Assembly (NCBI GenBank): GCA_963924565.1
Contig: OZ004611.1
Location: 21,886,001 to 21,950,000, forward strand
Length of the DNA stretch: 64,000 bases
From: Ascidiella aspersa
Lineage: Eukaryota
Reading direction: 5' to 3'
The notes beneath the pieces were generated by a model, which was given only the letters and a program-made list of their open reading frames with translations, ran no database searches and was not told the DNA's origin. How positions within the stretch are numbered: position 1 is the stretch's first letter; each line of letters begins with the position of its first letter. Below are positions 4,067 through 64,000 of the stretch, piece by piece. A program made the translations under genes and the position numbers.

Positions 4067-4996
4067 ATGTACAACCTCAGCACTCACACATCGGAAAACG
4101 CAACTATCTTGCGATTTCTCCACGCGGAGTGGCTGATTGCCGAGCTGTTCAACTTCGGCGCCCTGTTTCTCGTAACCTGGATCGAGCTGTCTTTTCTGCT
4201 GTACGGAAAGCGAAACGGAAAGTTGCGCGGCAAAGCGGACCGTCTTCAAATCAGCGCCGGCGCTGTGTACAAGTGGGCAATGCTGGCTTTCGTGTTTAGC
4301 TACGTGCGCCTCCTCACAGACCAGGTAATTTTCAACATTGGGTATATCGGCGATCAGGAGCGGCTATGCGAGATCCTTATGGACTTATCAACCGCAGGGC
4401 TCTACCTGACCGGCATCAGCTGCTATTTCTTCCTCTGGTATCGCCAGCGCGCCCTCTACCAGCACCCAGGCCTGCGCAAGCTGAAAACAGCCTGGCTGAG
4501 CTGCGCGGACTTCGGCAGCATATCGATCATCCTTCTCGGACTGGTCTTTTCGGCGCTCGCGACCATTTACCCGCGAAACTACAGCGCTTCATCGCGCGGA
4601 TGCGTTGGCAAGCCGTCCAACGATTTTGTCCTGTGGCCTTCCTACTTAAGCACGGCTGTAACCTCGCTCGGACAAAGCCTTATGCTCTTTCTCTTCATTT
4701 ATCCTCTGAGGAGGAACGAAATTGCGTCCGGACGCGTTTCGCGGATCATGAAGCGCTCCGCCTACCTCGCGTGCCTCTTTGTCGTCACTGACGTCACGGC
4801 TCTGGTGATGTACGTCTTCGTGGTGCCCAGCCACGCGACCCGCCACGTCACGCTCACGGTGTATGACGTCAATCTGATGACGAACCTTCTCAGCGTTCTC
4901 TTCTCGTTCGATTCGTGGCGACAAATCGTTCTTTCGCCAATCAAAAAGAGCGCCGGCTACAGCGTGAACTATTCCATACGCAGCATTGTGACGTAG
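4067..4996 (+). CDS. 7TM orphan receptor family member, locus 1 (309 aa, intronless CDS)
   Basis: ATG-to-TAG ORF with seven hydrophobic segments. N-terminal sequons NLS and NAT. Family motifs RFLHAEWL, LCE (TM3 Cys), LWYRQ, SSRGC, LFIYPLR, RIMKRS, DVNLMTNLLSVLFSFDSWR. Confidence 0.9.
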   Translation: MYNLSTHTSENATILRFLHAEWLIAELFNFGALFLVTWIELSFLLYGKRNGKLRGKADRLQISAGAVYKWAMLAFVFSYVRLLTDQVIFNIGYIGDQERLCEILMDLSTAGLYLTGISCYFFLWYRQRALYQHPGLRKLKTAWLSCADFGSISIILLGLVFSALATIYPRNYSASSRGCVGKPSNDFVLWPSYLSTAVTSLGQSLMLFLFIYPLRRNEIASGRVSRIMKRSAYLACLFVVTDVTALVMYVFVVPSHATRHVTLTVYDVNLMTNLLSVLFSFDSWRQIVLSPIKKSAGYSVNYSIRSIVT

Positions 4997-6514
4997 GCAT
5001 TTGGTGACGTCAAGCGTTTGGTGGCGTCTTGGTGTTGCGTTCATCTAGTTTAGGCCAGTTATTGGATTATTTGTAGTTCACGTAATTGTGGATTCAATAA
5101 GTAGCATCCTCGATTTAAAAAACCTTGCCTTTAGTGTTTCTTCATTGAAAACTGACACAATACTTTACGTTTGTTCAAAACGTTAGCTGTATTTCTTACG
5201 AGTTTTTATCAGTGTTGTAATGACTTTGGTCATTAACTTTACTTAATTACACGTAAGTCACTGTTGTCAAATGCTCGACTTTAGTCTTTCAAACAAATGA
5301 CTTGACTTGGCCTTAAGTCATTATTTCAATCACTATAATTTTAAATTAATTGTTTTCATATCTATTTTATTATAAAATCGCGTTATTTATCTTAGTTTTT
5401 GAACGTTTAACAATTCGCTCGTTATATGTTGCTCTTTTTTTATTCTTTAGTTTAGTTATTGGTTATATTTGGATGTCGACGTCTTATTTTTATGCTAATC
5501 ACTTGACCTGGAATTTTCTATAGCTCTATTATTAACTTGACTTGTACTTGAATTGGGCAAATGGAGACTTTGGAATGAGAATTTTTTTTGCAAAAGACAT
5601 GACTTAATAAAAAAATAACGTAGCACTTTCTTATTTTATGGTCGCACTTCTTCTATTCATTTTATGTGCTAGGCCTATATGTTTTACTTATTCCGCTCGT
5701 GGTAGTAAATTTTGTGCAATAAAATATTTTGAGGCATGGCATCATTTATTAAAAGACTAACATACATAGAACTTATTACAATATTCTGACTCAAACAGAC
5801 ATTACGTATACGTAAAGGAGGAATGTGAAATTATTTAAAAGTTATAGGTTGCACATGTCAATAAAACTATTACAAAATGAAATAACCAAAATAATAATTT
5901 TATTTTAAAACATTTAGACAATAGCTGCAAAATACAATGATATTTAACATAGCGAGTCCTCTGTAAACCCTAACCCGCAAAACAAAACACCTTTTGCCAA
6001 ACATTATATTGGTATATTTGAAAAAAAAACACAACAAAAAAATTGTATGTCTTCCGTGCTTTTAACTTGTCATGTCTTGCTAACTTTCATGACATGGGAG
6101 TCTTTTTTTTAGAAGGGTGAAAAGTCCTAGTAACTTTTTGCTGATTTTATTGTACTTTAACATTACACCTAGAGTTCAGTTAAAATAATTTCTTAAAAAG
6201 GGTTTCTTCTCGTACTGTTTCTTTCAATCCAGGCTGTTATCGTGCTCATTTTATTTATTTGGGCATAGTTGGCAAGCTCGCGTGTTTGAACAAAAAAAAT
6301 AACTGTTTCTATTTAGGGGTGAAAATTATAAAAATATTTATTCTTGACTCATTGCTTTAAAAGTTGAAGCTGGGTTTCATAACTGTGAATTACTTACGGA
6401 AGAAATATGTATAAGGCTTCAGCTAAAATATATTAACTACTGGAAATACCTTGGCGAAGCTAAAAGAAGAAACAAAAGTAAACGCCAACAAAAACTGCAA
6501 TTATAATTACTTTA

Positions 6515-7408
6515 TCAGTTCCGGCCGATAGTAAAGGGCGACTTTAAGATTTCCGGCCAAGTTTCAAAGGAAAACAGAACCGCTAGCAGGTTCGTCATTA
6601 AGTTGACGTCATAGACAGTGACGGTGATGTGGCGCGTGGCCTGCGCCGGCACCAGAACGGCCAGCAGCACCATGGCGCCCAGATCGGATGATATGCAGAC
6701 CGCCGCCATGCAACAACACCTTTTGGTAAGGGCCTTTACGCGATGCATGAACATTCCTGTTGAAGACGCTCTCAGGGGTTGAACAAAAAGCAGCAGCATC
6801 GATATTTGACCGGTCAGCAGGACCACTGAGCTTAAGTAAAGCGGCCAAATAACAAAGTCGCCTCTCGGCCTGCTGATACAGCCCTTCGGTGAATGCATGT
6901 AGTTGTTTGGCACGGTAAACGAGAAGAGAAACACAGTGAACCCAGCTGTAATGAAAGCCAAGCTGCCGACGCTTAGGTAACGCTGCCAACCTGTTTTAAC
7001 AGCGTCGCAAATAGCAGGGTGCTGGTACAGCGTACGGTGCCGCAGCCACAGCAGATAGTACGTGCAGTACATGCTCGCAGTCATACCCACGATTGAAATG
7101 TCCATTAAAAGCTCGCAGGCTGTGGGAGTGCTGTCCTTGTAACCCACGTTGAAGGTAACCTGGTCAGCCAAAAGTCGTATGTAGGAGGTTGAGTAGGCCA
7201 AAACGGCGGCCGTGTAAAACTGCCCGCTGCTCAGCCTTCCATGCTCCTGTCACTTCCATTTATGGTGCTTCTTTCCGTAGGAAACAAAACCGATCAGAAT
7301 CCAAGTGACAGTCGCCAACGCTGCGACGTTGAAAAGCTCGGCGACGATCCAATACACCTGACAAAACCTGTCGACTTCCTGGCTTGTGTTAGAGGTGTTT
7401 CCCTCCAT
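6515..7408 (-). pseudogene. 7TM family locus 2: full-length 297-codon frame interrupted by one in-frame TGA at codon 53 (7250-7252); young pseudogene, null allele or readthrough gene
   Basis: Manual translation from ATG 7408 gives MEGNTSNTSQEVDRFCQVYWIVAELFNVAALATVTWILIGFVSYGKKHHKWK*QEHGRLSSGQFYTAAVLAYST..., in frame with the 6515..7201 ORF. All other family motifs are intact. Confidence 0.85.
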
Positions 7409-9445: not shown

Positions 9446-10393
9446 ATGGAGATTGGCGCCGGAGTCAGCAACATGCCAGCACCGAACGCCAGCGCGTCAC
9501 CATCGAACCACTTTACCCACCCGGAATGGATCGTGGCAGAGACTTTTGGCGTGTTCGCCATTTTCTGTTCGCTCTGGATCGGAATCAGCTTCGTGGTCTA
9601 CGGGATACAGAGCGGCAAGTGGACTGGTAACGGCTGCGGCGGCGGCAGCGAAAGCGGCGACGGTTGGGTGTGCGCGGCAGCAGTGGTCGCCATGTGCTTC
9701 ACCCTGCTGCGTTTTATCGCCTGCCAGGTAGCTTACAATGTCGGCTATAACGAGCTACGGGAACCTTGCGAGCAAAGCGTGGACGCAGCTGCCGCGCTTT
9801 ACGCCCTAGCAGTCCTCAGCCTCTTCGTAGTGCTCTGGCTCAAGCTGCATCACCTCTACTGTCGCATAGCCGCCGTACGGGCGCTGCAACGCCGCCTGAT
9901 CGTGGTCAAATGGGCTACGTTGTGCGTTGTGTTTTGCAGCGGCGTTGTAGCTCTGGTCGCTCACGCCTTACCAAAGAGCTTAACCGGGTCCGCGCGAGGC
10001 TGCGTCACGCTGGATACTTCGCAAGGAACCAACTGGGCGCTTTACTTCGGCTTCGCAACGCAGCTGGTCGGACACGTACTGCTGATTTGCCTTTTCGTCT
10101 ACCCGCTTCGATCGGAGATGCGCGGCAACGTTGCAAGCGCCGTTCTGCGCATTCTTAAGCGCTCGACGGCCGTAGCCGCCACCATAACGCTCTTTGACCT
10201 GGTCACTGCCGTAGCCCTGTCGGTGGTTATACCCAGGCAAGCTACTCAGCACCTGAGGCTGACCGTGGTCGACGCCAACCTGTGCGCAAACGTGCTTTGT
10301 GTGCTGCTGTCGTTTGAAAACTGGCGTCGGATTTGCGATAGCTGCCGCTGTTGTTTTGAAGCGAGGCGCCGCACTTCCACGATTGATGTGTAG
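9446..10393 (+). CDS. 7TM family locus 3 (315 aa, intronless CDS)
   Basis: Motifs NHFTHPEWI, PCE, LWLKL, SARGC, LFVYPLR, RILKRS, DANLCANVLCVLLSFENWR. Sequon NAS. Gly-rich first intracellular loop. Confidence 0.9.
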   Translation: MEIGAGVSNMPAPNASASPSNHFTHPEWIVAETFGVFAIFCSLWIGISFVVYGIQSGKWTGNGCGGGSESGDGWVCAAAVVAMCFTLLRFIACQVAYNVGYNELREPCEQSVDAAAALYALAVLSLFVVLWLKLHHLYCRIAAVRALQRRLIVVKWATLCVVFCSGVVALVAHALPKSLTGSARGCVTLDTSQGTNWALYFGFATQLVGHVLLICLFVYPLRSEMRGNVASAVLRILKRSTAVAATITLFDLVTAVALSVVIPRQATQHLRLTVVDANLCANVLCVLLSFENWRRICDSCRCCFEARRRTSTIDV

Positions 10394-12671: not shown

Positions 12672-12836
12672 AATAAGAATATCAAAGCCCATACAGAAGT
12701 AGGTATCATTTCGGACGTTTCGAATAACTCTTTATTCATTTTCTCTTTATTCATAGCCTATGTTAAAAATGAATAAAGAGTTATTCGAAACGTTCAAAAT
12801 GATACCTACTTCTGTATGGGCTTTGATATTCTTATT
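12672..12836. repeat. Long inverted repeat: 71-bp arms (2 mismatches), 23-bp spacer; member of a dispersed palindromic MITE-like family
   Basis: 12672-12742 is the reverse complement of 12766-12836. Related fragments occur near 18447-18555, 37448-37505 and 49508-49570. Confidence 0.85.
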
Positions 12837-15802
12837 ACGTCTTACTACAACCTCCAACCATTATGCTCCATTGTTCTAACCAAGATTTCTCCAAAATTTA
12901 AGATTTTTAAGCAAGCAATAAGATTGACTCATCCTAATTAAATTAAAATTCATTAATGCTACGTAACTGTACGATAATTGGTTCACCGCAAAAAAAAGTT
13001 AAGAAACACTGGTGTACACAGAGATTTTGTGCTCCAAAATATCTTCAACACTGGATAAAACGAAACTTTTCGACGCTAACACTTAATGATTACAAATATT
13101 TTCATCCAATTAATATACCTGTGTACTTGTTTTTTTCTATTGGTAATAAAAAACACAAAAACTTGCAGTTTAGTTATGTGTGTATAACCCACAGAAACCA
13201 ATAAACTATAAGAAGTTTCATTTAACCCGTTATTGAAAGACTATACGTATAGGTTAAAAGTTGGGCGGATTATTGATAAAACTTTATTCAGTTAAAGTGA
13301 ACGCAATACAGCTGGGTAATTCCTGCCTCACCAAGAGTTTAGGCATTCGAGCATTGTTTAGTAAACTGGGGTCTTTGAGGAAGTTTCATAGGCCCGCAAT
13401 AGATATTTTTAATAAAAAATTTTAGACCCTGTGTAGAATAGTTTGTATCAGTAGTGATTTGAGTTATTAAGTAATTAATGTCCCGTGATTAGTTTCATTT
13501 TACTGTTTGTTTTAAAATCTATAGGGTCCGCCGTAAGTTCAACGTAGCAAAGGAGATTGACAGATAGAAACGTTTGAGAAACATATAGAGACAAGCTGAA
13601 TGATTTATTAGAAAAATGGTATTCACCCTGTTAGGGCGAAATTCGTTAAATACAATACGAGTCCGACATCGGCTTAAAATAAAATCGACTCTCAAATCTG
13701 GCTTCTAAAACACTTGTTTCCCAACCGTATTTGTAACTGAAATAGGCTTGATTTACACTAGCAAGCCTGATGTGCGTGTGATATAGGCCTACCTTAACTA
13801 GCGACAATACGTTGGCGGAAAAGTATTCATCCTGTATCTATATTTACACTACAGAGTGCGGCCTTGTTGATTCCCAAATGATACCGGAAAGTAGCAAAAT
13901 AAACCGACTCCGTCGAGTCCTGAATTCCAAATCGGGCACTGATTTCCTCACCTATCCATTTAGGTACTATGTACACTGGTTAAAAAAACGCGGATTGAGA
14001 AAAGGCAAGTAAATTAAAATTTGCTGAACGGCAAAGCTGTTTTAGCTGGTGCCTAATTCCGCAACATTGTCCAATTGTATAAACCCTTAACTGGTTTACA
14101 AGGAGTGAAGAACCGAAGTTGCACTACAAAGGAGTTATTTATCAAAAAAGCTTCGTATAAGAGTTTTAAGCCTACATCCAATCTGAAATTATTTGATAAA
14201 CGTATATTATGGCAATAAACATTTGTTGTGAATTCAGATTTTAACCAGTGATGTAACTGTAGCACTACACACAATAAACTTTCCGTGACGCCCTCCAATA
14301 TAATGCCCCCTTTCCGGTTTATAAAGCTACTATAGTTTTAGTTGATGTCGCCATTTACTTAGCATCTTAGCCACGCGTATTTTGTATTCGAGAAAGTATA
14401 ACGTATTCAAAATGTCGATATGTTCAGCGTAACATAGTTCGGGATAAGGTACGTTTGCCTTACAAGATGTTTATATTATTGAGTGTTTTATTACGTACAC
14501 GCTACGGATAAATATAACCCCATGTTGGTCTGCTCTAGAATTAAGTGTTACTAACCTTCATTTGTGAAATGAAAAAAGTAACACATTTGAAACACCTTTA
14601 AAAACCTTTATAAAAAGGTGATACAAGATTTATAAGATGTCGGACAACTTTTAAAAATAAAATTACAATGATTTTATTTTTCAAGCAATTTCTAGTGCGA
14701 GAATTGGTTGGTGATTTGATAGGGTGTGTATATTTCAACAGGGAGACATGACCACCGTGCTATAAACTCCACTAAATCAAAACTAAATAAACTGTCTATG
14801 CATTTCAAAGGACATACTGTCGGGTCGCTTATAAATTCATTGTACATTCGAAAAATTTAGCATAACTCCGCTTTCAATAAAACAGCTTACAGCGCAGTAA
14901 AAACACGTCTCGCCAGTTAAGCATGCATATAGATGAAATAAGCTATTGCTGCCAGGCATAATATATAACGGAGTGTTGTTCTTCCAGCAGAAGAGCAACA
15001 CTCCGTTATATGCATATAGATGTTTATCCGGGAGCCGCGTGACACTGTATAGCACAAGAGAGAAATGCGTTGGGATTAGCTAAGTCAAAATGCCAACTGA
15101 ATTTGCCAGACAGGCCAGAAAAGGAAAAGAATATCGAGGTAAAATATTTAACACTTCACCAGGCAAACACGCTATAGGTTACAAGCACAAACAGACATGC
15201 ATCGTTTCTCTACAGGTGCAGCAAGGAAAAAGGTTAAGAACCACCGGTTTAAAGTGTAGTAAAAACAATCTCAAGTTAAAGGTTTTTTTGTTACAAGGAA
15301 AGTGAGCAACAGCTTTCACATGAGTGACAATTAGCTGCCAAGAATACTAAAACATAAGCAAATTAAGTTAGCTTTACGGTGTACTTTTTCCAAATGTTTG
15401 GTAGCTAAGTGGTATTTTTGTTAGATTTTGAAGGTGTTGATTTACATCTTTGATGTATTACTACTAGGTAATCGACGTGAAAGTAGCAATACTGTACTTG
15501 TTACATCTATGCTAAATAATTTTCAAGGGTAAAATAAGTCAGTTTTGTGTACCGGTACGTGTTTAGCCAGCATATTGCCGCTTGTCTATGTTACATCAAT
15601 AGGTGCACTTATCAAGTCACACGAAACAAAAGTATCAGCCAAATGGATAAAAAAAGTTTTTTGTATAGGTCTACATTGTGTGTAACTTATTGCACCTTGT
15701 CTATTAGAGATAAATGTTACTACTGTTTTTGTCAATTACTAAACCTATTTGTTTGAGGCTATTGCTGGTCAGATATCAGACATCAAGAAGCAGGCTGCAG
15801 TT

Positions 15803-18800
15803 ATGACCACAACTGAGGTAATTGGCAGCAGCCTCACCACCACAACTCCAACCCAAGCTCTTACGCCATACAACAGCACTAAACCTGTCCAAGCCGCCGT
15901 GAACCGGTTCCATCAGCCGGAGTGGGTCATCGCTGAGATGATCAGCATAGTCACGGTACTCTCTGTAACCTGGGTCGTCTGGTGCATGGCAATTTACGGA
16001 AGGCGGACTAGCAAGTGGAGAACGGAAAATGTGCGCGACGCCACGAAAGTTAACGCCGGGGCTGTTTACACATCGGCAATCGTTTGTATGCTGATGAGCT
16101 ATGCGCCTTTGCTGACTTCGCAGGTAAAAACTCTTGTGATAAGTTGCCATTTTAATATTGTGATCCATATAAGATCACCTTTTTGCGTTGCACGTAGGCT
16201 ACAGTAGGTAAGAAACGTCCTCAATCCATAACAACTGTATAGTTGACTTTAAAATTTAGAAGTTAGGAATGGTTTACCCAAGTAAAGCTACCTAAGTCAT
16301 TCCCTGCAGTAAAACTCTACGTTAATCTAATGACAAGTATCCAATTAGTTTTACAACCTATGGTTTTGCTTCAACCTTCAAAAGACAAGACGACTCTTTA
16401 CATAACGTGCCTGAGGTTTACAACAAATTAGATAATACTTGACTGTACATCGGTTGACTTTTGTATGAGCTTTGACATTTCTGCTACGTCTAGAAGCCCT
16501 ATATCTAAAATCTACACCACTATGCTGCAAACTTCAATGTTCTTGATTGTGTTGCACGTTTCCATAAAGCGTTACACCCGAAAAGAAACTAGCATTACAG
16601 AACACACATTAGGTTGACTAACTTCTCAGTTATTGTTGTAGCCACTATCAGTCTGCAAACGTCGAAGTGGTCGCAGATTTTAACAACCATGTTATGGTGT
16701 AACTACTCCAAAAGAAAAGTATATAATTATGGAAGCATGTTAATTGATCACATAACGACATGTGTTTTCCTGTTTAACTTACACCTCTTCCGTCATCCGT
16801 AAAACTCGCCAACACACGTGTTTTATCCTGGAAACTTTTAAGGCCATTTTCAACCTCGGTTACATGGACGACGGCCCCGGTCCTTGCGACACCGCGCTTG
16901 ACGTCTACGTCATCGCCTACTCGTTCACGATTGTCAGCGTGTATACCTTCCTCTGGTTCAGACAACGCTCTCTCCACCTTCACCCGGTCATGGCGGCGGC
17001 CACAGGCGGCACGTGGTTGCGGCGGTTGAGTTGGATCAGTATTAGTGTGATAGCTGGTGGCATATTCGTTGCTTGCGTGGCCTTCGTGATGCCGGGTAAG
17101 TCAGACCAATAGATATTGGTTCGAGAATAAATACCCTTAAACCAGTATAGTTCCAAACCAGGATGCCTAAGGATACTGGGGGTTAGTTTTGATTCTTATT
17201 CTACTACAGGGCTTTGCAACTTGCTTACGTCACTGTAGCACAATTGCTCAGTTTGCACCCCCAGTACATTCGAGTATTAGGCATAATCCCAGAGCTACAT
17301 GCTTAATGGGGAAGGCAGTTTGTTTTTTGCGAGCAACGAAATTGATTTAGTCAATGTTTTAAAAGAGAATGTACTTTATCGCCCTTTAGCAACAAAATTA
17401 CCTTTTTGTAAGAAACGTTTGTGGACTTCTTCGATATATAGGTCACTACGAACCCTAAGGGTCCCATGTACCACATATAAAAAGTCCCACTCAATTGCTA
17501 TAGGCTTCGTGATAAATTTATTTTTGTGCGATTAGAGCAGGGGTGGGCAAACTTTTTAGCTCGAGAGCCGCATTCAGAATCTGAATTTGTTCGAGGGCCG
17601 CACCGTATTATAATTGAGAATCTAAAATAGTAAAACCACTGAAAATCAGTACTTGCCGTTGGTAGCTGTTTTGCTTCTATTTTCGATTCAACTTTAGAGG
17701 ACACACAACGCTGACAGCATCAACCATACAATCTTTAATACATTCCGCTTCTACAAATGGCTTGTTGTGTTTTGAATTTTTATTGGCTAATGTTGGCTAT
17801 TGTCTCAAACATTTTTTTAATTCAGTCGCTTCATTTTGACACTCATGATTTGATAAATTGTGCCAAAATTAGGATGCTTGGTTTCAAAGTGACGTTTCAA
17901 ATTTTAATCTTTAAATACAGCAACGCTTCAATGACAAATCAAACATATTGCTTTACCTCCGACATACTTTTCTGTATATTCTTTCCAAGAATAAGATAAC
18001 ACTAGTAATGCGACATGCCGTACTCATAAATTTCCATTGTGACGTAATAGGCTGTTTAGCAACCTAAAGCCTGGTGCACACATGTGTCGTACGGCAGCTA
18101 ACACACTGCGGGCGAGAAATTGAAAATTGTCGCTCAATGAATGCAATTAAATATTTAAGCGAGCAATTTTATTAATATTTTTTATTCAAATCTCTTCAGA
18201 CTTCCGCGGGCCGCACAAAAAATTGTCACGGGCCGCATGCGGCCCGCGGGCAGTAGTTTGCCCACCTCTGGATTAGAGTGTAAAAATTTGGCAAACATTT
18301 ACTAGTTAGTTGTGTTTACTAGTTAGTTGTTGTATTGTTATCAATGTAAACGACTAGACGAAAATACTAGTATGCTGCCGCTGTTTTTATTAGCTATTTT
18401 GTAGGGCGCCGCTAAAGCCAAAAACGTTGGAAACCACTGCCTTATTGGGGCATAATCGTTGGAGGTTATAGTTAGACAAAGAGGAATAAAGAGCTATTCA
18501 AAACGTACGAAAAATGTCGTGTATACCTAAATGAGCTTTGATATTCATACTACCGCTTATACCTTTCGATCGAAAGAAACTTTTATAAATTATATTAAAA
18601 CGTTGGAATAAACTGGTCAAGATTTTACACTGCCAATCGAAACGTTTAACACTATAGGTTCTTGTTACAATACTTTTTCTATGTACCGAAAGAAGCTCTT
18701 TTTTGTGTCGTTTTGCTTTGCGTGGTGTTGTTTATTCCCTGATGAAGATATCCTGAATAAGTTCTGGTATCAACAGCATATTTATACTTTCTCTATTTTA

Positions 18801-19785
18801 TTTGAACTTAGTTTTACTTAATTCCTCTTATTGGGTGAGCCAAGGGTTCAATAGAAGGATTGGAGTGTAATATTCGACAGCTTAATTACGGAGCACGGAA
18901 TGGGGACCTGGCCAGTCAAATTAGAAACTTAACACATAATGGAATAAATAATGTAATACGGTTAACTTGTTTTGTGAAACGTTTCAATCGGTACACAAAT
19001 TTGCAGATAAAGTAAATAGGACATGTTTTCACCTAAGTATTTCTACGTGCTTGTGCATAGTCATCACCCAACTCATGTTTCTTCAATCACACGAACTGCT
19101 GTCGAAAAGTTCATTTGGGACCCAACCTTAACGTAAAACTTTCTTAACGTATGGCCAAGTGAGGCATATTTTCTCCTAAAATGCGTATGTTACCAAGCAA
19201 AGCTTTGTTTCCACATTCGTCAGCCCACGTTTTAGCGCGATTGGGCATGTGATATTAGGGTTTAACTTTAACATAACCTTCCTGTGCTCAGAAAACTACG
19301 CAAACTCGAGTCGCGGCTGCGTGTCGAAACCTTCGGGCGAGTTCGTGATCTGGCCGATCTACGTTAGCACAGGGATCGTGTGTTTCGGACAGGCGATCAT
19401 GCTCCTCCTCTTCTTTCAGCCTCTTCGCACCCGGACCTGCCGCCAGAGGGCAGCACGACGCGTTCGCCGCATCCTGAAGCGTTCGGCTTTCTTCGCGCTG
19501 CTCTGCGCCGCCTCGGATCTCGTCGCTATGGCAACGCTCGCCTTTGCTGTTCCCGAGAGCTCGACGCGTCACGTGACCACAACCGTGTATAATGTCAGTA
19601 TTGCTTTCAACCTGGTCAGTGTTCTATTAGCCTTCCAGTCGTGGCGCAAGATCTTGCGAGCTCCCTTCATGCGGCCGGGCGACCAAATCTCGGCTTCTTC
19701 CGTTGGTGTTTCAGGCTCTGTTGATTCGCTCGGAAATTCCAACGACGCGCAGCTGCGTGTTGTACTTCCAACCGGGATTCCGTAA
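15803..19785 (+). CDS. 7TM family locus 4a, three coding exons (15803-16123, 16843-17095, 19292-19785; 355 aa)
   Basis: Three ORF-track fragments carry consecutive parts of the family. Intron 1 is CAG|gtaaaa...tttaag|GCC (phase 0) and intron 2 is CCG G|gtaagt...ctcag|AA (phase 1). Splicing gives an open 1068-nt frame. Thr-rich N-terminus with sequon NST. Confidence 0.85.
17538..18270. mobile_element. Non-autonomous hAT-type element (MITE) in intron 2 of locus 4a
   Basis: TIRs CAGGGGTGGGCAAACT / AGTTTGCCCACCTCTG, perfect 8-bp TSD GATTAGAG, subterminal GCGGGCCGC motifs. Confidence 0.9.
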
Positions 19786-21081
19786 AAACGAACGCATAGT
19801 TCCCCTTTGGTTCGGTCGTCGATTTATGGAAGTTTTAGCAGTCGTTTGCTCTCAATGATAAAATCTGATCGGAGCCAAAATCCGATATTAAGTATCAGTG
19901 TGATTTGTTTGCCCACACTGATATGGTTTCGACTTAATTAATTTTTGGCAAATGAGCTTTAGGATTAATTTATTGAATCAAATGAAATTAAGTTTATTTA
20001 TTAAAGAAGACTTGCCTGGGATTTGAGTCGTTTGAAAATGACTTATAAAAACAACACTGCAGATTATGCTCGGCATTTTAGCAATTAGTTTGCCATCGAA
20101 CTCGGTTATTTTCACCTTCAAAGGCACCTCTTAAAAATATAGCATATAAACAACCAACCGTAACTAAGATGATTTTTCATCTATCAAACAAATTTTGCCC
20201 CAACAATCTGTGTAGCCCTATGCTAATTATAATGTTATCAATAACGCCCATTCAACTAAAGTATAGTGACCTTATTTGGTATCACATCACAGGGCCACAC
20301 TTTTAGGCTAAAATACCAGAAATCGCTCTCGGCAGAAATACGAGGTATTGTGTTTTTGTTGGACTGTAGCGAACCGTTGTTAAATCTGAAGCAAGTTAAT
20401 CTCAAATGACAGCTGTCTAGATGACGACGTTTCAAGTACCACAATTAGTGACCTAGTTCCTCGATAAAATTTCATTCGTTGCCTTAAAAATAAAAAAACA
20501 GAAACCGTCATTGCTTGCTAAACGTATAGCTACGTTCTGAGTCAGACGTCGTAAGGTTGTAAAACAGGCTTGATATTACTAAATAACCTGACGTCAACTC
20601 TGCATGACTGCGCTGCGTCTTTCTAAATATATATTGTCCTATACACAAAACGGCTTATGGTAATCTTAGTTTAATAAACCAAAAAGAATACCGTACTAAT
20701 AGATGAGTTACTTGAATGGTCTCTTCATTTTAGACAACCTATAGTGAACACGTGGTAGAGATAGTTCAACCGCTGTCTGTTATATTTTTTACTTTGCTGT
20801 GAGACTCTAATACTTACAAGCTATATTACATGTGACGAAAATTGTAACAAATACCAATTAGTAAATCAGGTATATATTTCTCACCCAGTGCCACACAGAG
20901 TTGCAGCAGTTCATAGAAAACAATTTTACCTTTTTGTTACAGCTTCGACAAACATTTGTAAAATTTAACAACGGAAATATCTAAAATACACTTAAACGAT
21001 AAAAGGAGCCAAGTTAAACTTCATAGCGCAAATACTGTATCGTAGCTGTTTTTTTTTTGTTTGGCTTCTCGAACAGTGCTG

Positions 21082-21990
21082 TTATTTCCGCACTAGCATA
21101 CACGAGATGATTTTGCGCCACGAGTCAAACGATAAAACCACGCAGAACAGGTTGCAGCACACGTTCAAGTCGAACACAGTCAACTTCAGTTGCTGTGTGG
21201 CTCGTGCCGGGACCACAGTCGAGCTGACCACTGCCAGTAACAGGTCACTTATCGTCATGGCGGCAGCAACGGCTGCGGAACGTTTCAGAATCCTCATAGC
21301 TGAACCGGCGATGCTAGTTTGCATTTGAAAGCGAAGAGGGTAAACGAAAAGGCCGATCAACAGCAACTGGCCGATCATCTGGGTGCCGAACGCCACGTAT
21401 AGCGGCCAGTAGACTGTGTTTTTGTGGTAGAAGGTAATACAGCCTCTGGTTGACCCGGTTAAGTCGTCTGGGTAAACAAAAGCAACAAGGGCGACCAATC
21501 CGCTGCTGAATGTTAGCAGCAGGGTTCCCCACTTGACGTACGACAGCCACCGGTCAAGGACCTGTATAGCGGCGATATGGCGATATAGGTAGAACTGTTT
21601 GAGCCACAGAACCAGAAACGCGCAAAATGTCGTTAGAGCGTAGAATACCGCCGAAGCGCCAATGGTCGTTTCGCAAGGCTCGCCCAGCGTTCCGTAGCCA
21701 ACGTTGAACGCCGCCTGGTTTAATGCTAGTCGTACAAGGGCGCAAAAAACGGCAGTAACTGTAGCGGTGTAGACCGACCTCGCGTTGATTTCTGCAATGT
21801 TGGTGACGCCCTTGTGCCACTTGCCGTTCCGTATTCCGTAAACTACGAAGCTAAGGCCGATCCAAAGCATGCAGAAAATAGCCAAGACGTTGAAAGCCTC
21901 GGCGACAATCCAGTCCGGTTGGTGAAAACGATTGGCTGGACTTGAGACATTGTTCGCTTCTGCAACAACAGGCAAGCTTCGGTTCTCCAT
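21082..21990 (-). CDS. 7TM family locus 5a (302 aa, intronless CDS)
   Basis: Motifs NRFHQPDWI, PCE, LWLKQ, STRGC, LFVYPLR, RILKRS, DLNVCCNLFCVVLSFDSWR. Sequons NRS and NVS. Confidence 0.9.
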   Translation of the reverse strand: MENRSLPVVAEANNVSSPANRFHQPDWIVAEAFNVLAIFCMLWIGLSFVVYGIRNGKWHKGVTNIAEINARSVYTATVTAVFCALVRLALNQAAFNVGYGTLGEPCETTIGASAVFYALTTFCAFLVLWLKQFYLYRHIAAIQVLDRWLSYVKWGTLLLTFSSGLVALVAFVYPDDLTGSTRGCITFYHKNTVYWPLYVAFGTQMIGQLLLIGLFVYPLRFQMQTSIAGSAMRILKRSAAVAAAMTISDLLLAVVSSTVVPARATQQLKLTVFDLNVCCNLFCVVLSFDSWRKIISCMLVRK

Positions 21991-22588
21991 CCTGCTTTAT
22001 CTTACGTTTAATTTGAGCCTAGTTCAGAAGTTAAAAATTACGAACATGTGCTCCTAAAGATTAAACAAGTCTGCGCAAAAACGCGATTGGATATTACATC
22101 AACGTAAAAATACAACTTCGAAAGCTTGTTTGCGCCTTTTTGTCGAAGTCATTTTCGCAGGTGAGCTTAATCGACTTAAAGATTTTATAGAGACAACAAA
22201 TAATAGTTGATATCAAAACCTATAATTTTTCAATCACAGCCTTATCTTCCAAAATTTCATCAACCGTATCCAACCATGGCCTTTCTAAACCTTATTGCAA
22301 AGTCTACATCAATCCCACTTCAAAAAGCGACACCACATCTTGTGTTGACAAACACTATGTAACCTAGACGTTTTACACAAGCGGAACTGAGCGGTTTCGA
22401 TGTGGTTCGGCATCGTTTTAGTGGCAAGGGCTATTCTGCGATGACGTCATAACGCACTGTTTTCATTTCAAAGTGACGTCACGCCGTGGTGGTGACTGAA
22501 GTTGTGGCGTACTTTCGCATCGTGCCCTATCGAGGTTGTGTTTTAAGCGTCCTGCATTTTAACGCAAAATGCTTATCGCGGTGGTGAC

Positions 22589-53115: not shown

Positions 53116-55152
53116 TCAAACCGGGACGAACACAGGTCCGGGGTTTCCGCGACATTTTAAAAGGCAGGTGACGATCTTGCGCCACGGCCCGAAGGCTGTC
53201 AGCACGCAGACGTACGTCACAAACAGTATTGCGTCGAAGAGCGTGTAGCTGACGTGGCGCGTTGCGTGCTTAAGGTCGGCGGCGAGGTAAATCGCCACAA
53301 AGGAACTGACCACGACGACCGTGGCGGTGGCGGCCGAGCGCCCAAAGACCTTGAGGACGCGGCGCACATTCTTGCTCTCCTGGAGCTGGAAGCTGAGCGG
53401 TAAAAGTAATAGTAGAACGAGGAGCAACTGAGCAATGAATGTGGTGCAGAAGGCTAGCTTCAGACTCCACGAGTTAGCGTTAATATTCCCGTAACTTGGC
53501 ACGCAGCCTCGGTTGGAGCTAGCTGTTTCGATCGCTGCTGTGTAGGACACGACCGACCCCACGCCGCCCACAGTAACTACGAACAGGGTGGACCACTTGA
53601 GGGCCTGCATCCACTTGGGGACCGGTCGTAGCTCGGACACCAGCTGCAAGAGACGGTGCTGTCGGAGCCACAGCACCAGGTACATGCCCACGATCGCCAC
53701 CGTGTACAAAGCGGTGCTGAGCTTGGCCAGAGCGCTGCAAATGGGTGTGCCGTTAGTGCCGTAGCCCACGTTGAAGACCACCTGTTTTAGACAAAAAAAC
53801 ATAAAGGTAAAAAATAGATCTAAAACAATGGTTCCCAACCGAGGGTTCGCACGGCACGGGTTTGTCTGGGGGTCGCGTATGTATTATTGGATAAAGGAAA
53901 AACTTTATACGAAATAAGAATTTTGAACTAAAGGTTTACCAGTATAGAAGGAGCAAAAGCAACCTCCAGTCTAACATTTGTGTTTGTTTACGTCTTTACG
54001 ACGTCACCTTTACACTTTTTAATTAATTAATCAAGGATAGCTTCATTCAAACAAAAAAATAGAAACGAATTGACTCTTAAATCGTAACTTTAGCTTGTTG
54101 TGCACACTTAGATCCGGATATTTTAGCCAAATTTTGATACAATCACTCTTTTTTCCTAATTTAAAGTTTGCCAATTTTGAGATGTGTTTTTGTTGAGTTC
54201 ATTTTATGTATCATACACTATAATTAGGGCGTCGCGCGAGAACAAAATAGTTGGGAACACTTGAATTCGAAAACAACCTTAATTCAAAACATAGAATGTT
54301 GCAGTTTCGCCAAAAGCGGAATCCTCAGTTTTGCCAAAATCAGCAAACACAACGAAAACACTAAGCATGTTTTAAAAGTTTTTCAACGCTTAGGTTCCTT
54401 TCGGATCTTGCGATATGAATAAAAGATTAACATCTGGCAGTGGTAGAAGTATAGGCACCAAACGTGGGTGTGTAGAGCGTTTTTAGACGTCATGGAATTC
54501 TCGCAGGGCGTCGAAACTCCCGATGGAATTCGACCAAGTTATCAATGAATGTGCAAAATAATTTCTGCATAGCACTGTCATAGTTAACCAAAAGTGTTTA
54601 AAACTTTCCTTGGTTACCATATTTGTACGATGCTATATAATTCCAAAACTAACAACTTGTTTTTTCAAATTATTGTTAAGTTTAGGCCAAAAGTGCGAAA
54701 AAAGATTTTTAAAGGCGAAATGGTTTTCTTGGTGGTACCAGGCAAAAGCTGTTTTCTAAGAATACATTTTTATCTAATTAATAAGTAATTATAGAAAATA
54801 ACGCCCTTGAATTTTGAAAGATCGGCGCCTATGGTTTGAACAGGTCTGGATCCAAATAGAACAACAACCAAAATATTAATAACAGTAATAATTTATCAGC
54901 AACCTGGTTTACGACGTAGTGCAGCAGTAAGGGGAGGGCGCAAAGGAGGTAGCAAGTGTACATGCGCACGCACATCAGACCGTCGTTGGCGCGCGGCGTA
55001 TCCTGCCACATTCCGGTCCGCTTTCCGTACACCAGAAAGCTGACGCCCACCCAGGTAATGCAGAGCAGCGCAAAGCAGTTAAAGACCTCGGCCGCTATCC
55101 ATTCTGCCTGCATGAAGCGGTCGAACGGTATTGGGTTGCTCAGGTTGCTCAT
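53116..55152 (-). CDS. 7TM family locus 9, two coding exons (55152-54904 and 53781-53116; 304 aa)
   Basis: MSNLSNPIPFDRFMQAEW...VVNQ joins VVFNVGY... across a 1122-bp phase-0 intron AAC CAG|gttgct...aaacag|GTG GTC. The donor is weaker than consensus. Confidence 0.8.
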
Positions 55153-60216: not shown

Positions 60217-61117
60217 TCAAGTGGCCACGGCGCTCACAGAAGTGCCACGGCTTCGGGCGCTCGATCGGCGGCCTGAGTTGCTTTCCCCCTGACTGCCTCG
60301 CCTGTATCGACCAGCAGCTATGTAGGCTGCACAGCAGGGGAATGGCAGCAGCTTCTCGCGGTAGTCGGCGAACGAGCAGAGCACGCAAGCTACGTTAACC
60401 AGCAGGTTGCAGCTAAGCACGACGTGGTTCATATAGACGGCCGGGTACTTGTAGACGGCGGCGAAAATCGACGTGAAGATGTCTGACGCGATGCACACAG
60501 CCGTCATGAGCGCCGAGCGCCGAATCATCGGGATCACTTTGCGGGAGTTGAACCCGCGACCTAGCATCTTGCGGCGATGCAGATGAAGCGGGTAGACGAG
60601 CGAGGCTAGCATCAGCAGCTGGCAGACGATGGTGGTGCCGCCCAGTATAATCCACCTGTACTGCGTCGATTTGGTGATGACGGCCGGCGCGCACCCGTAG
60701 CTGGTCGTCACATAGGTGGGGCTGGACAGGAAGACGGCGTAGTTGGCCACGGTCAGGATGACCAGCGCCACCATGGCGGCCACGTTGATAACCTGCGCGC
60801 ACTTGCTCGTGCTTCGCTTAGTGATGGAGTGCCAGTAAAAGGCGGTGAACACGCGAAACCAGAGGGTGAGGTAGACCGACACCACGCAGAGCCCATACGA
60901 AATGATCTTGGCGCGGTGGTAATGCGTGCAGATGCCAGGAGGCGGGGGTAGGGAGACAAGGGCAGCCTCCACGGAGACGTACAGCAGAGCCGCGAACGCG
61001 CTGACCACCAGGAGTGAGTTGACGATGCCGGCTCCACGCGTCTCGTTCCGTCCGGCTCGCGGGCGTTCTGCAAAGACACGCGTATGTTGAGATTGCTGCT
61101 GTTGTTGCTGTTGCTGT

Positions 61118-61152
<35 letters not shown>

Positions 61153-64000
61153 TAGCGTCTGGGAACGGAGGCGTTGGCGACGCGGACCGGCGCCTATACA
61201 CAACAGAGGCGAAAATACTCGGAAGGGGGTTACGCTTTTTGTTGGTCGCCGGGCGCAGTTGTGTTAGCCTATGAATTTTTAGGGTTTTCGACTGAGTATA
61301 GTCTGGGGCAAAATGACCTGACCCGAATACAACGACCTTGGTATATTTTGTACGGTAAAAAAATACAAAAACATTTCCCGCCCATTGTAAAAAATAAGAT
61401 AATTTTGAGTAATTCTTGCACTTTCTTTAAAATTATTGGCAAAATACGTGTTACTTATTTTTATCTAAATGTTAGCCAAAATATATATGTTCTTATAAAC
61501 CTGACACAGCTATTTGAAAATTAAAAATCTGTAAAAGGTGCTTTATTGAAATCAATTATATATAAAAGGCATATCTAAAGATAAAGGGTAATAACAACAC
61601 AGTGGTATTTTGGTCGGAATTTATAATCACTTTCCTTTGCCTATGAAAACCCTATTAATGTCAACTTTTCAGTACTTTATTTTTAAAAACTGTGTTAATT
61701 ACAGTTTAGTATAACTACCATAGTAAGCAATATATAATTTTTATTGCCACATAAATATCTCAACCAAACCTTGCGGCATGATTAAAAATTAATATCATGA
61801 GCGTTTTCCGTAACTTTTCATAGAAAATAAAAATTTATGTTGATTTTCAGGAATTGTTATATTTTTATTGCAATGGATATCAATATTTAATTAATTAATG
61901 GTCCGTCGTGTTAGTAGGTTAATTGCTTTATTTAGATCAATTAGACCTTATCACAATAGAACGTTATGGTCAAATAATTTACAGTGATATGTGTTTAATT
62001 CTTTCCAGTTGTAAGTAAATACTAACAATGCTAAACTGGAAATTGATCTTTTTCACCTTTAACAGTGGCAGATTTTGTGTGTCCAAGACCGAGTGGAAGA
62101 GTGGAGTTTATTGAAAACACATGGTTGACAAACTTGACACCTTTAGCGTGGCAGAGAGTACGAACCCTCGTCACTTTTTGAACCAAATTGTGTTCCAAGG
62201 TCATGACTGATGTAAATTATTCAAACGGCCTAACAACGACATAACTTATTTGCATAAACTTTCTGTATTTGTAATGTCAAATATTTTTCTTTATTTCGAA
62301 CGCGTGTAATAGTTCACTTAATATTTTGGCGTGTTTGGGCCCTAAATGCAAAATATTACCCTTAGCCAATTTTAACAGGAAACGTTTTGTTTGACAGTGA
62401 CTTGACTTAAACTTGTCTTGCTTTTGTAGTGACTATATGTGTTAAATTTAATTTGGTATTTGTTTTAAATGAAAACTTCTTAATTAAAAAACTTTGAGAG
62501 ATCACACGCAGTTATTTCGCGAATAATTATACTTAAATCAATATTTTTCATTAATGACTACTTTACCAGAGATATGCGTAGCGTTATTGGAGAACGCTAT
62601 GGGAAAAGTTTGACGTCATTTTAATAAAAGCGTTATAATAGGGCAGTGGTCTCCAAACTGTGGGTCGCAACCCCATGTGGGGTGTCCTAAACCTTTTTTG
62701 GGATGGCCATCACTCACCAATTCCTGCAGTTTTAGTGATTTCATTTCGCTTGCCGCTTAAGCGAGCGCAACAAATATGAAAAACGTTAAAAGAAATCAAA
62801 ACATTGTTGTATTCATTTGTAACTTTTAATCAAAGCGGTAATTTAAACTTCTCATTTTGGTACACATGTTCATTGTTCAGCCACAGTTCTCTATAGACCT
62901 GTGTATAAGTTAATCATAATCAAACGTTCGTGTTATTTAGTTCAAGTATTACTTATCTGAAAGCAGATGTAAATGTCGATATTAGTTTGTTTAAATTGGA
63001 GTCGGTTAGTAAAAAGGTTGGATACCACTGTAATAGGGAGTATGCTTGCCCCCACGTTGTTCAGGTAGCACCTAATACGTACAGTACCAAAATCTCACAC
63101 TCACATTTACGTTTTCCTGTGTCTTATACATAGCGTTAAAGTTACTCATTGGTGATGTCGAACACACTTTCATGACGCGTTACCCTCATTAATGCGATTG
63201 GCAACAACCGCTGCGTGCCGCGCTTATTCTATTTAAATCATGTCCTATTCCGCAATTAGTCGTGTCCTTTTCCCCTATGACGCTCGACACCGGAATGACA
63301 TTCTTTGAAAACGTTTTTTATCCGAAAAGAGAGTAATGTTTTTCCACTGTTTAAAGTAGCAGGGTTTAATAAAAACCTTTCACAAACCTATGATTTGCAA
63401 AATCGTCATCAAAAACGTATGTGGGTACAGTTTTTATAGTTTTCCATTTTTAATGAAAGTGGTTTTGCTCTCCATTTGGGTTTAATCTAATTTGCTAATT
63501 TGCATTTAAATACCGGTATTTCGCTGTAAAACAAGGTCTGTTTAAAAGTGCGTCCGTATCGATATTATTTTCTTGCGTACATATTACAATTGTTTTAAGA
63601 ACTCGAGGAGCTAAATCCTATACGTAAATCTTGACCTATTAAATATATAACTGTAAAGCTGTATATGAATAGTATTTACAATATATTGTGGCTACAATCT
63701 CTTCTTTCAAGCAAAGTTGTAAATGTTGCAAGATGGATAGAAATTGGAAACGGTTTTAAATTGGCACATAAATCAATAGCAACGAGTATTGAAAAAACCC
63801 ATGCACGCCTCATACTAAAGCAAAGACCAAATTGGGAAAATGCGGTGTTGTTTTTTACAGCAATATCGCAGTTTAGCTCTTTCAAAAGCTGCCACGAAAC
63901 TTTTAAAGTGCGCCAATGCAAATTCGCGGCAAAGTCACTTACCCGAGTTGCAGCAATAGAGGTGCTTTTTACAGCTATAGTAGATCAGGGCTGCGATAGC
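60217..64000 (-). CDS. Divergent 7TM family member, locus 11, 5'-partial (exon >=64000-63943, intron 63942-61194, exon 61193-60217), with Q20 in the first intracellular loop
   Basis: The large exon encodes TM2-TM7 (ICT, LWFRV, TSYGC, LVYPL, MIRRS, SDI, NLLVN...SFADYR) but no TM1. The last 58 nt of the window read AIAALIYYSCKKHLYCCNS-G (end of TM1), followed by a consensus donor G|gtaagt. Its phase 1 matches the acceptor ...tgtgtatag|GC at 61194. Confidence 0.8.
61093..61152 (-). repeat. Mixed CAG/CAA trinucleotide repeat encoding 20 Gln
   Basis: 60 bp of ctg/ttg triplets on the + strand, in frame with locus 11. Confidence 0.95.

What the first reader, a model, noticed from the sequence alone, without database searches (positions are those of the whole stretch)
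4067..64000. Tandem array of 13 loci of an unnamed 7TM receptor family: candidate lineage-specific chemoreceptor repertoire
Seen: 13 related loci in 60 kb on both strands, ~300-355 aa, seven hydrophobic helices, short N-termini with N-x-S/T sequons, a Cys at the top of TM3 plus a Cys in ECL2 (SxRGC), basic intracellular loops, many intronless CDSs, a fresh duplication, a single-stop copy and a decayed pseudogene. Established: an extracellular glycosylated N-terminus with a TM3-ECL2 disulfide is GPCR topology, unlike the inverted insect OR/GR topology. Clustered short 7TM genes under birth-and-death evolution typify OR, TAS2R, V1R and nematode chemoreceptor families. These proteins lack the signatures of those classes and of class A generally (no DRY/MAYDRY, no CWxP, no NPxxY). 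Inference: an independently expanded sensory receptor family. The sequence style suggests an ascidian to me. Tunicates are reported to lack vertebrate-type olfactory receptor genes, so this could be their missing chemoreceptor system. Immune or hormonal roles are not excluded.
Basis: partly seen in the sequence, partly recalled or inferred. Interest (0 to 1): 0.9.

Follow-up and report, generated by a model that had tools for sequence, protein, structure and literature searches.

The report
Large orphan ascidian 7TM receptor family
This window holds 13 copies of a large seven-helix membrane receptor family, found so far only in sea squirts, that no database names and no paper I could find describes; it evolves the way smell and taste receptor families do, but nobody has shown what it senses.

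Summary
The window has 13 related loci. Nine have open frames (six single-exon, three spliced), one has a single TGA, one is decayed, one lacks helix 1, and two belong to a 10.3-kb tandem duplication.

The array is part of a roughly 185-kb supercluster. The genome has at least 115 matches to the family. Public data hold 1,211 cluster representatives. Every named one is an "uncharacterized protein" of Ciona, Clavelina, Phallusia or Styela.

No Pfam, PDB-sequence or profile-profile link to class A GPCRs was found. A confident AlphaFold2 model (pLDDT 91) is a seven-helix bundle plus helix 8. It resembles all GPCR classes and microbial rhodopsins only generically.

GPCR hallmarks are present:
- N-out topology with N-terminal sequons;
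- an invariant TM3-ECL2 cysteine pair;
- an invariant Arg/Lys exactly 25 residues after the TM3 Cys, which is the class A 3.25-3.50 spacing.

Paralogues are under purifying selection (omega about 0.2). Their cytoplasmic faces are nearly frozen and their outer halves diverge. A clade of 28 genes is specific to this genome.

The chemoreceptor role is plausible but untested. One RNA run showed almost no reads, and a receptor-G-alpha fold gave no verdict. First-stage readers noted two other clusters of this family elsewhere in the genome.

The parts
4067..4996 (+). Locus 1: intact single-exon gene, 309 aa; subfamily closest to Ciona P0001/P0151 (44-45% identity)
   Evidence: HMM E 1.2e-92
6515..7408 (-). 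Locus 2: full-length copy with one in-frame TGA at 7250-7252 (codon 53, ICL1); otherwise open
9446..10393 (+). Locus 3: intact single-exon gene, 315 aa
15803..19785 (+). Locus 4: three-exon gene (15803-16123, 16843-17095, 19292-19785), 355 aa, GT-AG introns
21082..21990 (-). Locus 5: intact single-exon gene, 302 aa; the protein that was modelled
26344..30335 (+). Locus 6: duplicate of locus 4 (exons 26344-26664, 27385-27637, 29842-30335); 6 nt and 1 aa differences
31632..32540 (-). Locus 7: duplicate of locus 5 (3 synonymous and 3 non-synonymous differences)
38799..39734 (-). Locus 8: intact single-exon gene, 311 aa; 69% identical to locus 5, dS 1.05, dN 0.21
42146..46727 (-). Locus 9: two-exon gene (exon 1 46455-46727, exon 2 42146-42814), about 313 aa
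49659..50645 (-). Locus 10: intact single-exon gene, 328 aa from the first ATG
53116..55152 (-). Locus 11: two-exon gene (exon 1 54904-55152, exon 2 53116-53781), about 304 aa
58010..58708 (+). Locus 12: decayed pseudogene; family pieces lie in three frames with many stops
   Evidence: (7 stops)
60217..61203 (-). Locus 13: divergent member (HMM positions 60-330 at 60331-61059). The ORF runs through a polyQ tract instead of TM1 and no TM1 exon was found, so it is either truncated or has a distant first exon
12727..33576 (.). Tandem segmental duplication: unit 12727-23025 repeated at 23076-33576, 98.6-99.1% identity, carrying loci 4+5 and 6+7

Best explanation
The window is part of a supercluster of a large gene family known so far only from ascidians. 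The family encodes about 300-aa cell-surface seven-helix receptors.

Shown:
- The genes are real and under purifying selection.
- The proteins have an extracellular, glycosylatable N-terminus, a TM3-ECL2 cysteine pair, an ECL2 beta-hairpin, a short helix 8 and basic cytoplasmic loops.
- The inner halves of the helices and the cytoplasmic motifs are conserved. These are F-L-W-L-R-Q-R-x-F-Y at the end of TM3, L-F-x-Y-P-L at the end of TM5, and K/R-R-S/T at the start of TM6.
- The N-terminus, the extracellular loops and the outer helix halves diverge between paralogues.
- The family turns over by tandem duplication, pseudogenisation and intron loss, and this genome has its own clades.

Inferred:
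- The variable outer half binds diverse ligands.
- The frozen inner face engages one common transducer, most likely a heterotrimeric G protein through the R3.50-like arginine.
- The repertoire reads external or self/non-self chemical cues. That would make it the ascidian counterpart of OR, TAS2R, V1R or nematode serpentine families.

My odds: real functional 7TM receptor family about 0.85; G-protein-coupled about 0.55; chemosensory in the strict sense about 0.35.
For: Scale:
- 13 loci in the window and at least 115 matches genome-wide in several tandem clusters.
- 1,211 public cluster representatives at E<=1e-3. Named ones come only from four ascidian genera covering all three orders.

Structure and topology:
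- AlphaFold2 model with pLDDT 91.4 and pTM 0.89: seven helices, an ECL2 hairpin and helix 8.
- Positive-inside rule: K/R per protein are 4.3 in ICL1, 7.7 in ICL3 and 4.3 in the C-terminus, against 0.5 in ECL1 and 0.4 in ECL3. The N-terminus carries 1.7 sequons on average.
- C106 and C184 are invariant. W129 is 99% conserved, R/K131 100%, Q132 91% and Y136 93%.
- The Cys-to-Arg spacing is 25 in 141 of 141 sequences.

Selection:
- Locus 5 against locus 8: dS 1.05, dN 0.21, omega 0.20.
- In the cytoplasmic stretches pN is 0.02-0.05 while pS is 0.4-0.66. That is selection, not gene conversion.
- In the N-terminus and outer halves pN is 0.26-0.52.
- Across the family, inner helix halves are 0.33-0.36 identical against 0.22-0.27 for outer halves.

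Turnover:
- An own-genome-only clade of 28 genes with support 100.
- A recent 10.3-kb duplication and two broken copies.

Background: tunicates lack vertebrate-type ORs (PMC2817399; PMC10963430).
Against: - No expression or ligand data. The one RNA-seq run, of which 6% was read, gave depth of about 1 or less on loci 10 and 11, and most laid reads were repeat-derived.
- No sequence link to any GPCR family: Pfam, PDB profiles, and hhalign against seven class A ORFs of the same genome at probability 0.3%.
- Fold searches are generic. Foldseek TM-scores are 0.56 or lower to every GPCR class. VIA-align ranks microbial rhodopsins (Z 16-18, rmsd about 3.3 A over about 230 residues) above GPR156/GABAB (Z 15-16) and class A (Z about 14).
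- DRY, NPxxY and CWxP are absent.
- Several outer-half residues are conserved family-wide (D111, Y117, Q208). That argues against unlimited ligand diversity.
- The own-genome clade could shrink once closer species are sampled.
Confidence: 0.5

Rival explanations
1. The family is a real GPCR-like receptor family, but its job is internal rather than sensory. Possible roles are receptors for ascidian-specific peptides or hormones, or immune or allorecognition receptors on blood cells.
For: - The Ciona GPCR survey found lineage-specific GPCR expansions whose ESTs come mostly from blood cells (PMC2396169, read).
- Rapid turnover and diverging extracellular halves fit immune receptors as well as chemoreceptors.
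- Some family-wide conserved outer residues (D111, Y117, Q208) would suit a shared ligand class.
Against: - A hundred or more short genes with tiny N-termini, in tandem arrays and with pseudogenes, is the classic chemoreceptor pattern.
- Peptide-hormone receptors are usually few and orthologous across species, but most genes here fall in species-specific clades.
- Near-absence from one bulk RNA run fits expression in rare cells, though only weakly.
Confidence: 0.25
2. The family is not a G-protein-coupled receptor at all. It would be a seven-helix membrane protein with another mechanism, such as a channel, transporter, enzyme or chaperone-like protein, whose bundle packs more like a microbial rhodopsin.
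For: - The best structural matches are microbial rhodopsins (Z 16.9-18.2, rmsd 3.2-3.4 A over 227-231 residues), ahead of any GPCR.
- There is no sequence link to GPCR families.
- The protein-language-model neighbours with a Pfam name are fungal DUF7703 membrane proteins, at a weak score of 0.85-0.86.
- The receptor-G-alpha fold gave no verdict, so coupling has no support.
Against: - No conserved Lys in TM7 for retinal.
- The beta-hairpin lies in ECL2 and is tied to TM3 by an invariant Cys pair, as in GPCR classes A, B, C and F (established knowledge). In microbial rhodopsins the hairpin lies in the B-C loop.
- Helix 8 is present, ICL3 varies from about 0 to about 100 residues, and Arg/Lys is invariant at the class A 3.50-equivalent position.
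- Z values of 14-18 are in the range the tool warns is common for helical bundles.
Confidence: 0.15
3. The family is not an independent 7TM class. It would be an extremely diverged offshoot of rhodopsin-like (class A) GPCRs, possibly even descended from the OR-like genes that tunicates are said to have lost.
For: - The C3.25-R3.50-like spacing of exactly 25 residues holds in 141 of 141 sequences.
- There is a TM3-ECL2 disulfide pair, an ECL2 hairpin and helix 8.
- UniProt auto-names some Ciona and Clavelina members 'G-protein coupled receptors family 1 profile domain-containing protein'.
- The top Foldseek hits are class A receptors (GPR55, ETB), though only at E of about 5e-4.
Against: - No PF00001 hit for any of 23 paralogues, even at E<=10.
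- hhalign against own-genome class A ORFs gives probability 0.3%.
- None of N1.50, D2.50, CWxP or NPxxY is present.
- The conserved Pro of TM5 sits at the cytoplasmic end of the helix, not at a mid-helix 5.50-like position.
- TM-scores of 0.56 or lower are far below what class A members give one another.
Confidence: 0.3

Closest known systems
Rhodopsin-like (class A) GPCRs, Pfam PF00001
   Same: N-out seven-helix topology, a short glycosylated N-terminus, a TM3-ECL2 cysteine pair, an ECL2 beta-hairpin, helix 8, and a basic residue exactly 25 residues after the TM3 Cys (the equivalent of R3.50). ICL3 is variable.
   Different: No Pfam or profile-profile match. D/E-R-Y is replaced by W-L-R-Q. 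There is no N1.50, D2.50, CWxP or NPxxY. The conserved TM5 Pro is at the cytoplasmic end. Foldseek TM-scores to solved class A receptors are only 0.42-0.55.
Nematode serpentine chemoreceptor superfamilies (Srg, Str, Sra and others)
   Same: Hundreds of short 7TM genes in tandem arrays, species-specific clades, pseudogenes, and no canonical class A motifs. One automatic cluster name in the ESM Atlas even reads 'Serpentine receptor class gamma'.
   Different: No hit to any nematode 7TM_GPCR_Sr* Pfam model. Named members are ascidian only. Many copies are intronless, unlike most nematode genes. Nothing suggests homology.
Vertebrate TAS2R and V1R chemoreceptors
   Same: About 300 aa, mostly intronless coding regions, short N-termini, clustered birth-and-death evolution, weak or absent class A motifs.
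   Different: No sequence match. The motif set is its own (CE..D, FLWLRQR.FY, LF.YPL, N...SF..WK). No solved TAS2R appears among the best structural matches listed.
Microbial (type 1) rhodopsins
   Same: Best global superposition of the model (Z 16-18, rmsd about 3.3 A). A compact bundle with short loops and N-out topology.
   Different: No TM7 lysine and no Pfam bacteriorhodopsin match. The hairpin and disulfide are in ECL2, not the B-C loop. The family is animal and multigene. The similarity is probably generic helix packing.
Class C 7TM domains without a Venus-flytrap domain (GPR156, GABAB)
   Same: Best GPCR superpositions (Z 15.2-16.0 over 231-251 residues; Foldseek TM-score up to 0.56).
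   Different: No PF00003 match. None of the solved class C structures matched closely enough (Foldseek TM-score 0.56 or lower, rmsd 4.2-4.4 A) to suggest kinship rather than a shared bundle.

Membership tests
Class A (rhodopsin-like) GPCR | Significant match to Pfam 7tm_1 (PF00001) or to a profile of class A sequences | tested here: not met
   No PF00001 hit for 23 paralogues at E<=10. hhalign of the 141-sequence family alignment against seven class A ORFs of the same genome gave probability 0.3%. None of the PF00001 matches reported in the genome at E<=1e-10 lies on a family locus.
Class A (rhodopsin-like) GPCR | E/DRY at the end of TM3, CWxP in TM6, NPxxY in TM7 | tested here: not met
   The patterns occur in 7, 1 and 1 of 141 sequences, at non-homologous places, and in none of the window proteins. 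The Arg of DRY does have an equivalent: R/K131 is 100% conserved, 25 residues after the TM3 Cys.
Class A (rhodopsin-like) GPCR | Conserved Cys3.25-Cys(ECL2) pair and N-out/C-in topology | tested here: met
   C106 and C184 are invariant in 141 sequences. C184 lies in the second strand of the ECL2 hairpin. K/R distribution and N-terminal sequons agree. The disulfide bond itself is inferred.
Class A (rhodopsin-like) GPCR | Close structural match to solved class A receptors | tested here: inconclusive
   Foldseek E of 3e-4 to 7e-3 and TM-scores of 0.42-0.55. VIA Z of about 14. This is generic 7TM similarity, no better than to other classes.
Microbial rhodopsin | Retinal-binding Lys in TM7 and a Pfam Bac_rhodopsin match | tested here: not met
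   No conserved Lys in TM7. The conserved TM7 residues are D274, N280, S287 and F288. No Pfam hit. The fold similarity of Z 16-18 is the only link.
Nematode serpentine receptors (Srg and others) | Match to a 7TM_GPCR_Sr* Pfam model | tested here: not met
   No such hit. The only link is an automatic cluster name.
Chemoreceptor multigene family (functional category) | Large copy number, tandem arrays, pseudogenes, lineage-specific clades | tested here: met
   At least 115 genomic matches in clusters. 13 loci here, with 2 broken copies and a 98.6-99.1% duplicate. An own-genome clade of 28.
Chemoreceptor multigene family (functional category) | Expression in sensory cells, ideally one or a few receptors per cell | tested here: inconclusive
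   One bulk RNA-seq run, 6% read, gave depth of about 1 or less over loci 10 and 11. No tissue information and no literature on the Ciona members.
Chemoreceptor multigene family (functional category) | Activation by external chemical ligands | not testable with these tools
   Needs heterologous expression and ligand screens.
G-protein-coupled receptor (functional) | Physical and functional coupling to a G-alpha subunit | tested here: inconclusive
   A fold of locus 5 with an intronless Gi-like G-alpha of the same genome scored ipSAE 0.21 and 0.14, below the 0.34 mark. The tool gave no verdict either way.

The most novel reading that the evidence does not exclude
This is a previously undescribed class of metazoan seven-helix receptors. 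It would have been invented or remodelled beyond recognition in the tunicate stem, and would serve as the missing ascidian chemosensory repertoire after the loss of vertebrate-type ORs. Signalling would run through a W-L-R-Q switch in place of DRY.
Probability: 0.3. Interest if true: 0.85.

Novelty: new variant of a known kind. Interest (0 to 1): 0.62.

Why it matters
Tunicates are the sister group of vertebrates, yet they have no OR, TAAR, V1R, V2R, TAS1R or TAS2R-type genes (PMC2817399; PMC2396169). Their larvae nevertheless choose settlement sites by chemical cues. What receptors they use has been an open question since 2009.

This family gives a concrete candidate set. It has 100 or more genes per genome, is present in all three ascidian orders including the model Ciona, and was invisible to the HMM-based GPCR surveys because no model exists for it. 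It can be tested directly in Ciona single-cell atlases, by reporter constructs, and by CRISPR.

Independently of function, the family is a confidently modelled 7TM fold with no close solved relative. It keeps only the TM3 Cys/Arg geometry of class A. That makes it useful for asking which GPCR features are truly indispensable.

Tried and rejected
- The search for homologous proteins gave nothing for a window protein, for the 141-sequence alignment, or beyond self for Ciona P0001. This is a word-index limitation, because the exhaustive representative search found 1,211 relatives.
- Sequence links to solved structures: none.
- hhalign against class A receptors of the same genome: none. The best local alignment paired non-equivalent helices.
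- Complex prediction of locus 5 with an intronless Gi-like G-alpha scored 0.21 and 0.14. The tool gave no verdict, so this is evidence neither way. Canonical multi-exon G-alpha genes could not be submitted because a joined model has no reference.
- Expression: one RNA run gave practically no specific reads.
- A shared upstream motif among 50 family genes: only weak AT-rich, TATA-like and GATAAAA k-mers, nothing convincing.
- Gene conversion as the cause of the identical cytoplasmic stretches of loci 5 and 8: rejected, because synonymous sites there differ (pS 0.4-0.66).
- The ESM Atlas lead to fungal DUF7703 (score 0.85-0.86): no Pfam hit supports it.
- Spliced models were never sent to a search tool as joined proteins. 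Exons were handled by reference. They were joined only inside a local script to check frame, length and copy differences.

Full report
**The observation**

The window (G000:C5:21,886,001-21,950,000; no N runs) contains ten ORFs of at least 220 aa that are plainly paralogous.

- Six are single-exon open genes: loci 1, 3, 5, 7, 8 and 10, of 302-328 aa.
- Three are spliced with canonical GT-AG introns. Loci 4 and 6 have three exons and 355 aa. Locus 9 has two exons and about 313 aa. Locus 11 has two exons and about 304 aa.
- The first intron of loci 4/6, 9 and 11 is at the same phase-0 position, after the conserved Gln at the end of TM2. Intronless genes sit beside them in the same clade. The intron is therefore probably ancestral and was lost repeatedly.
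- Locus 2 is full length with one TGA at 7250-7252.
- Locus 12 is scattered over three frames with many stops.
- Locus 13 is a divergent member whose ORF reads through a polyQ tract where TM1 should be. I found no TM1 exon up to position 64,000.
- A 10.3-kb unit (12727-23025) is repeated in tandem at 23076-33576 with 98.6-99.1% identity. This gives loci 6 and 7. Locus 4 differs from locus 6 at 6 nucleotides and 1 residue. Locus 5 differs from locus 7 at 3 synonymous and 3 non-synonymous sites.
- In a highly heterozygous ascidian this duplicate could be an assembly artefact. I could not check it.

**Scale and range**

- A single window protein finds 77 places in the genome. The family profile finds 115, with only 113 of 265 candidates scored, so this is a lower bound.
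- The window lies inside a run of about 26 loci between C5:21.85 and 22.04 Mb. Other arrays lie on C1, C2, C3, C4, C6, C8 and C9.
- First-stage readers had flagged two of those other clusters (s1-801615, s1-805294) without follow-up.
- An exhaustive profile search of 1.84 billion cluster representatives gives 1,211 hits at E<=1e-3 and 384 at E<=1e-30.
- Among 30 representatives looked up, every named one is an "uncharacterized" or "unnamed" protein of Ciona intestinalis, Clavelina lepadiformis, Phallusia mammillata or Styela clava. That covers all three ascidian orders.
- The rest come from unnamed ENA, JGI and Logan contigs.
- I found no paper that mentions these genes. The 2008 Ciona GPCR survey was homology-based and does not contain such a family (PMC2396169).

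**What the proteins are**

No Pfam family matches any of 23 paralogues, even at E<=10. Family profiles match no PDB sequence meaningfully. hhalign against seven class A receptor ORFs from the same genome gives probability 0.3%.

AlphaFold2 is confident: pLDDT 86 with 23 sequences and 91.4 (pTM 0.89) with 141. The model has these elements:
- seven helices at 25-54, 65-95, 104-145, 147-172, 195-221, 228-259 and 266-286;
- a beta-hairpin in the TM4-TM5 loop;
- a short helix 8.

Topology is N-out by the positive-inside rule, and the N-terminus carries 1.7 N-x-S/T sequons on average.

Family-wide conserved positions, from 141 sequences:
- C106 and C184 are invariant.
- D111 and Y117 are conserved (78% and 74%).
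- F127-L128-W129-x-R/K131-Q132-R133-x-x-Y136 lies at the cytoplasmic end of TM3.
- Q208 lies in TM5, and L214-F215-x-Y217-P218-L219 lies at its cytoplasmic end.
- K/R-R237-S/T lies at the start of TM6.
- D249, D274, N280 and S287-F288 are conserved.

However, the invariant basic residue 131 lies exactly 25 residues after the TM3 cysteine in all 141 sequences. This is the class A C3.25-R3.50 geometry. UniProt's automatic PROSITE family-1 label on a few members points the same way. "No class A signature at all" is therefore too strong.

**Fold searches do not settle the class**

- Foldseek finds all GPCR classes and bacteriorhodopsin at E of about 5e-4 to 7e-3, with TM-scores of 0.42-0.56.
- VIA-align ranks microbial rhodopsins first (Z 16-18, rmsd about 3.3 A over about 230 residues). 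GPR156/GABAB follow at Z 15-16, TMEM87A at 15 and class A at about 14.
- The tool warns that such values are common for helical bundles.
- Against a rhodopsin-type protein: there is no TM7 lysine; the hairpin and disulfide are in ECL2 rather than the B-C loop; there is a helix 8; and ICL3 ranges from almost nothing to about 100 residues.
- I read the family as GPCR-like in architecture but without a close solved relative.

**Evolutionary behaviour**

In a tree of 11 window rows, 45 other own-genome genes and 134 public representatives (FastTree), the window splits into three subfamilies.

- Loci 3, 5, 7, 8, 9, 10 and 11 belong to a clade of 28 genes with support 100. It contains only genes of this genome.
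- Loci 1, 2 and 4 form a small own-genome clade. Their best public BLASTP hits are the Ciona P0001 group (44-45% identity for locus 1).
- Locus 13 belongs to a divergent own-genome clade of eight.
- No own protein is more than 47% identical to a public relative, whereas paralogues reach 67-99%.

The genes are constrained. Omega is 0.18-0.22 for four pairs with dS of 1 or more, and 0.32 for the young pair.

They are held by selection, not homogenised by conversion. The N-terminus and outer helix halves have pN 0.26-0.52.

Family-wide, inner helix halves are the most conserved part: 0.33-0.36 pairwise identity against 0.22-0.27 for outer halves and 0.19-0.23 for extracellular loops.

A frozen transducer-facing side with a drifting ligand-facing side is what a receptor repertoire using one signalling partner should look like.

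**Function**

This is where the evidence stops.

- The one RNA-seq run of the species (6% sampled) puts depth of about 1 or less on loci 10 and 11, and 20 of 22 laid reads only partly fit. That is compatible with rare-cell expression and equally with silence in that sample.
- A fold of locus 5 with an intact intronless Gi-like G-alpha of the same genome scored below the mark. The tool says this counts for nothing either way.
- The genome does have an unusual tandem array of intronless Gi-like genes, already examined by another agent (s1-801697). I see no evidence that links it to this family.
- The literature confirms the premise. No vertebrate-type OR genes exist in ascidians or larvaceans, and "other gene families" were expected to serve chemoreception (PMC2817399; PMC10963430).

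**Verdict**

This is a real, large, undescribed 7TM receptor family whose named members are all ascidian. It has GPCR hallmarks, chemoreceptor-like genomics and a receptor-like selection pattern.

G-protein coupling is inferred at about 0.55. A chemosensory role is a reasonable but untested hypothesis at about 0.35. Immune or endocrine roles, or a non-GPCR mechanism, remain open.

Spliced models were not searched as joined proteins.

Noticed in passing
G000:C1:4766040-4782372 (L091, L093) and G000:C8:11045917-11046831 (L092): Six tandem intronless Gi-like G-alpha ORFs (352-378 aa) plus one dispersed copy. Their C-terminal tails diverge, and several copies have altered P-loop or switch motifs. 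Another agent has already reported this (s1-801697).
   Followed up: partly
window 52620-53190, 53950-54700, 55080-55250: High-copy repeats between and inside the intron of loci 10 and 11. DNA word depth is 400-10,000x against a baseline of about 46x, and the few RNA reads there carry unrelated flanks.
   Followed up: no
window 61060-61203 (minus strand, 5' part of the locus 13 ORF): A long CAG/polyQ tract of about 25 Gln is read in frame upstream of TM2 of locus 13, where TM1 is expected. It could be an intron read-through or a truncated gene.
   Followed up: partly
window 16123/16843, 46455/42814, 54904/53781: Loci 4/6, 9 and 11 share one phase-0 intron position, after the conserved Gln at the end of TM2, while close relatives are intronless. 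This implies repeated intron loss within the family.
   Followed up: partly
window 7250-7252: The only defect of locus 2 is a TGA followed by C (TGA-CAG) in ICL1. A first-stage note (s1-802302) suggests read-through. It could equally be a young pseudogene or a segregating null allele.
   Followed up: no
window 49600-55250: A run labelled as a different organism (X3, 'organism B') holds about 20% of the words of this stretch at 95-100% identity in short contigs. A closely related species or population therefore shares parts of the array.
   Followed up: no
G000:C5:21766303-21766857: A conventional class A GPCR ORF (PF00001, 456-aa frame) lies about 120 kb upstream of the window. It is unrelated to the family.
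   Followed up: no
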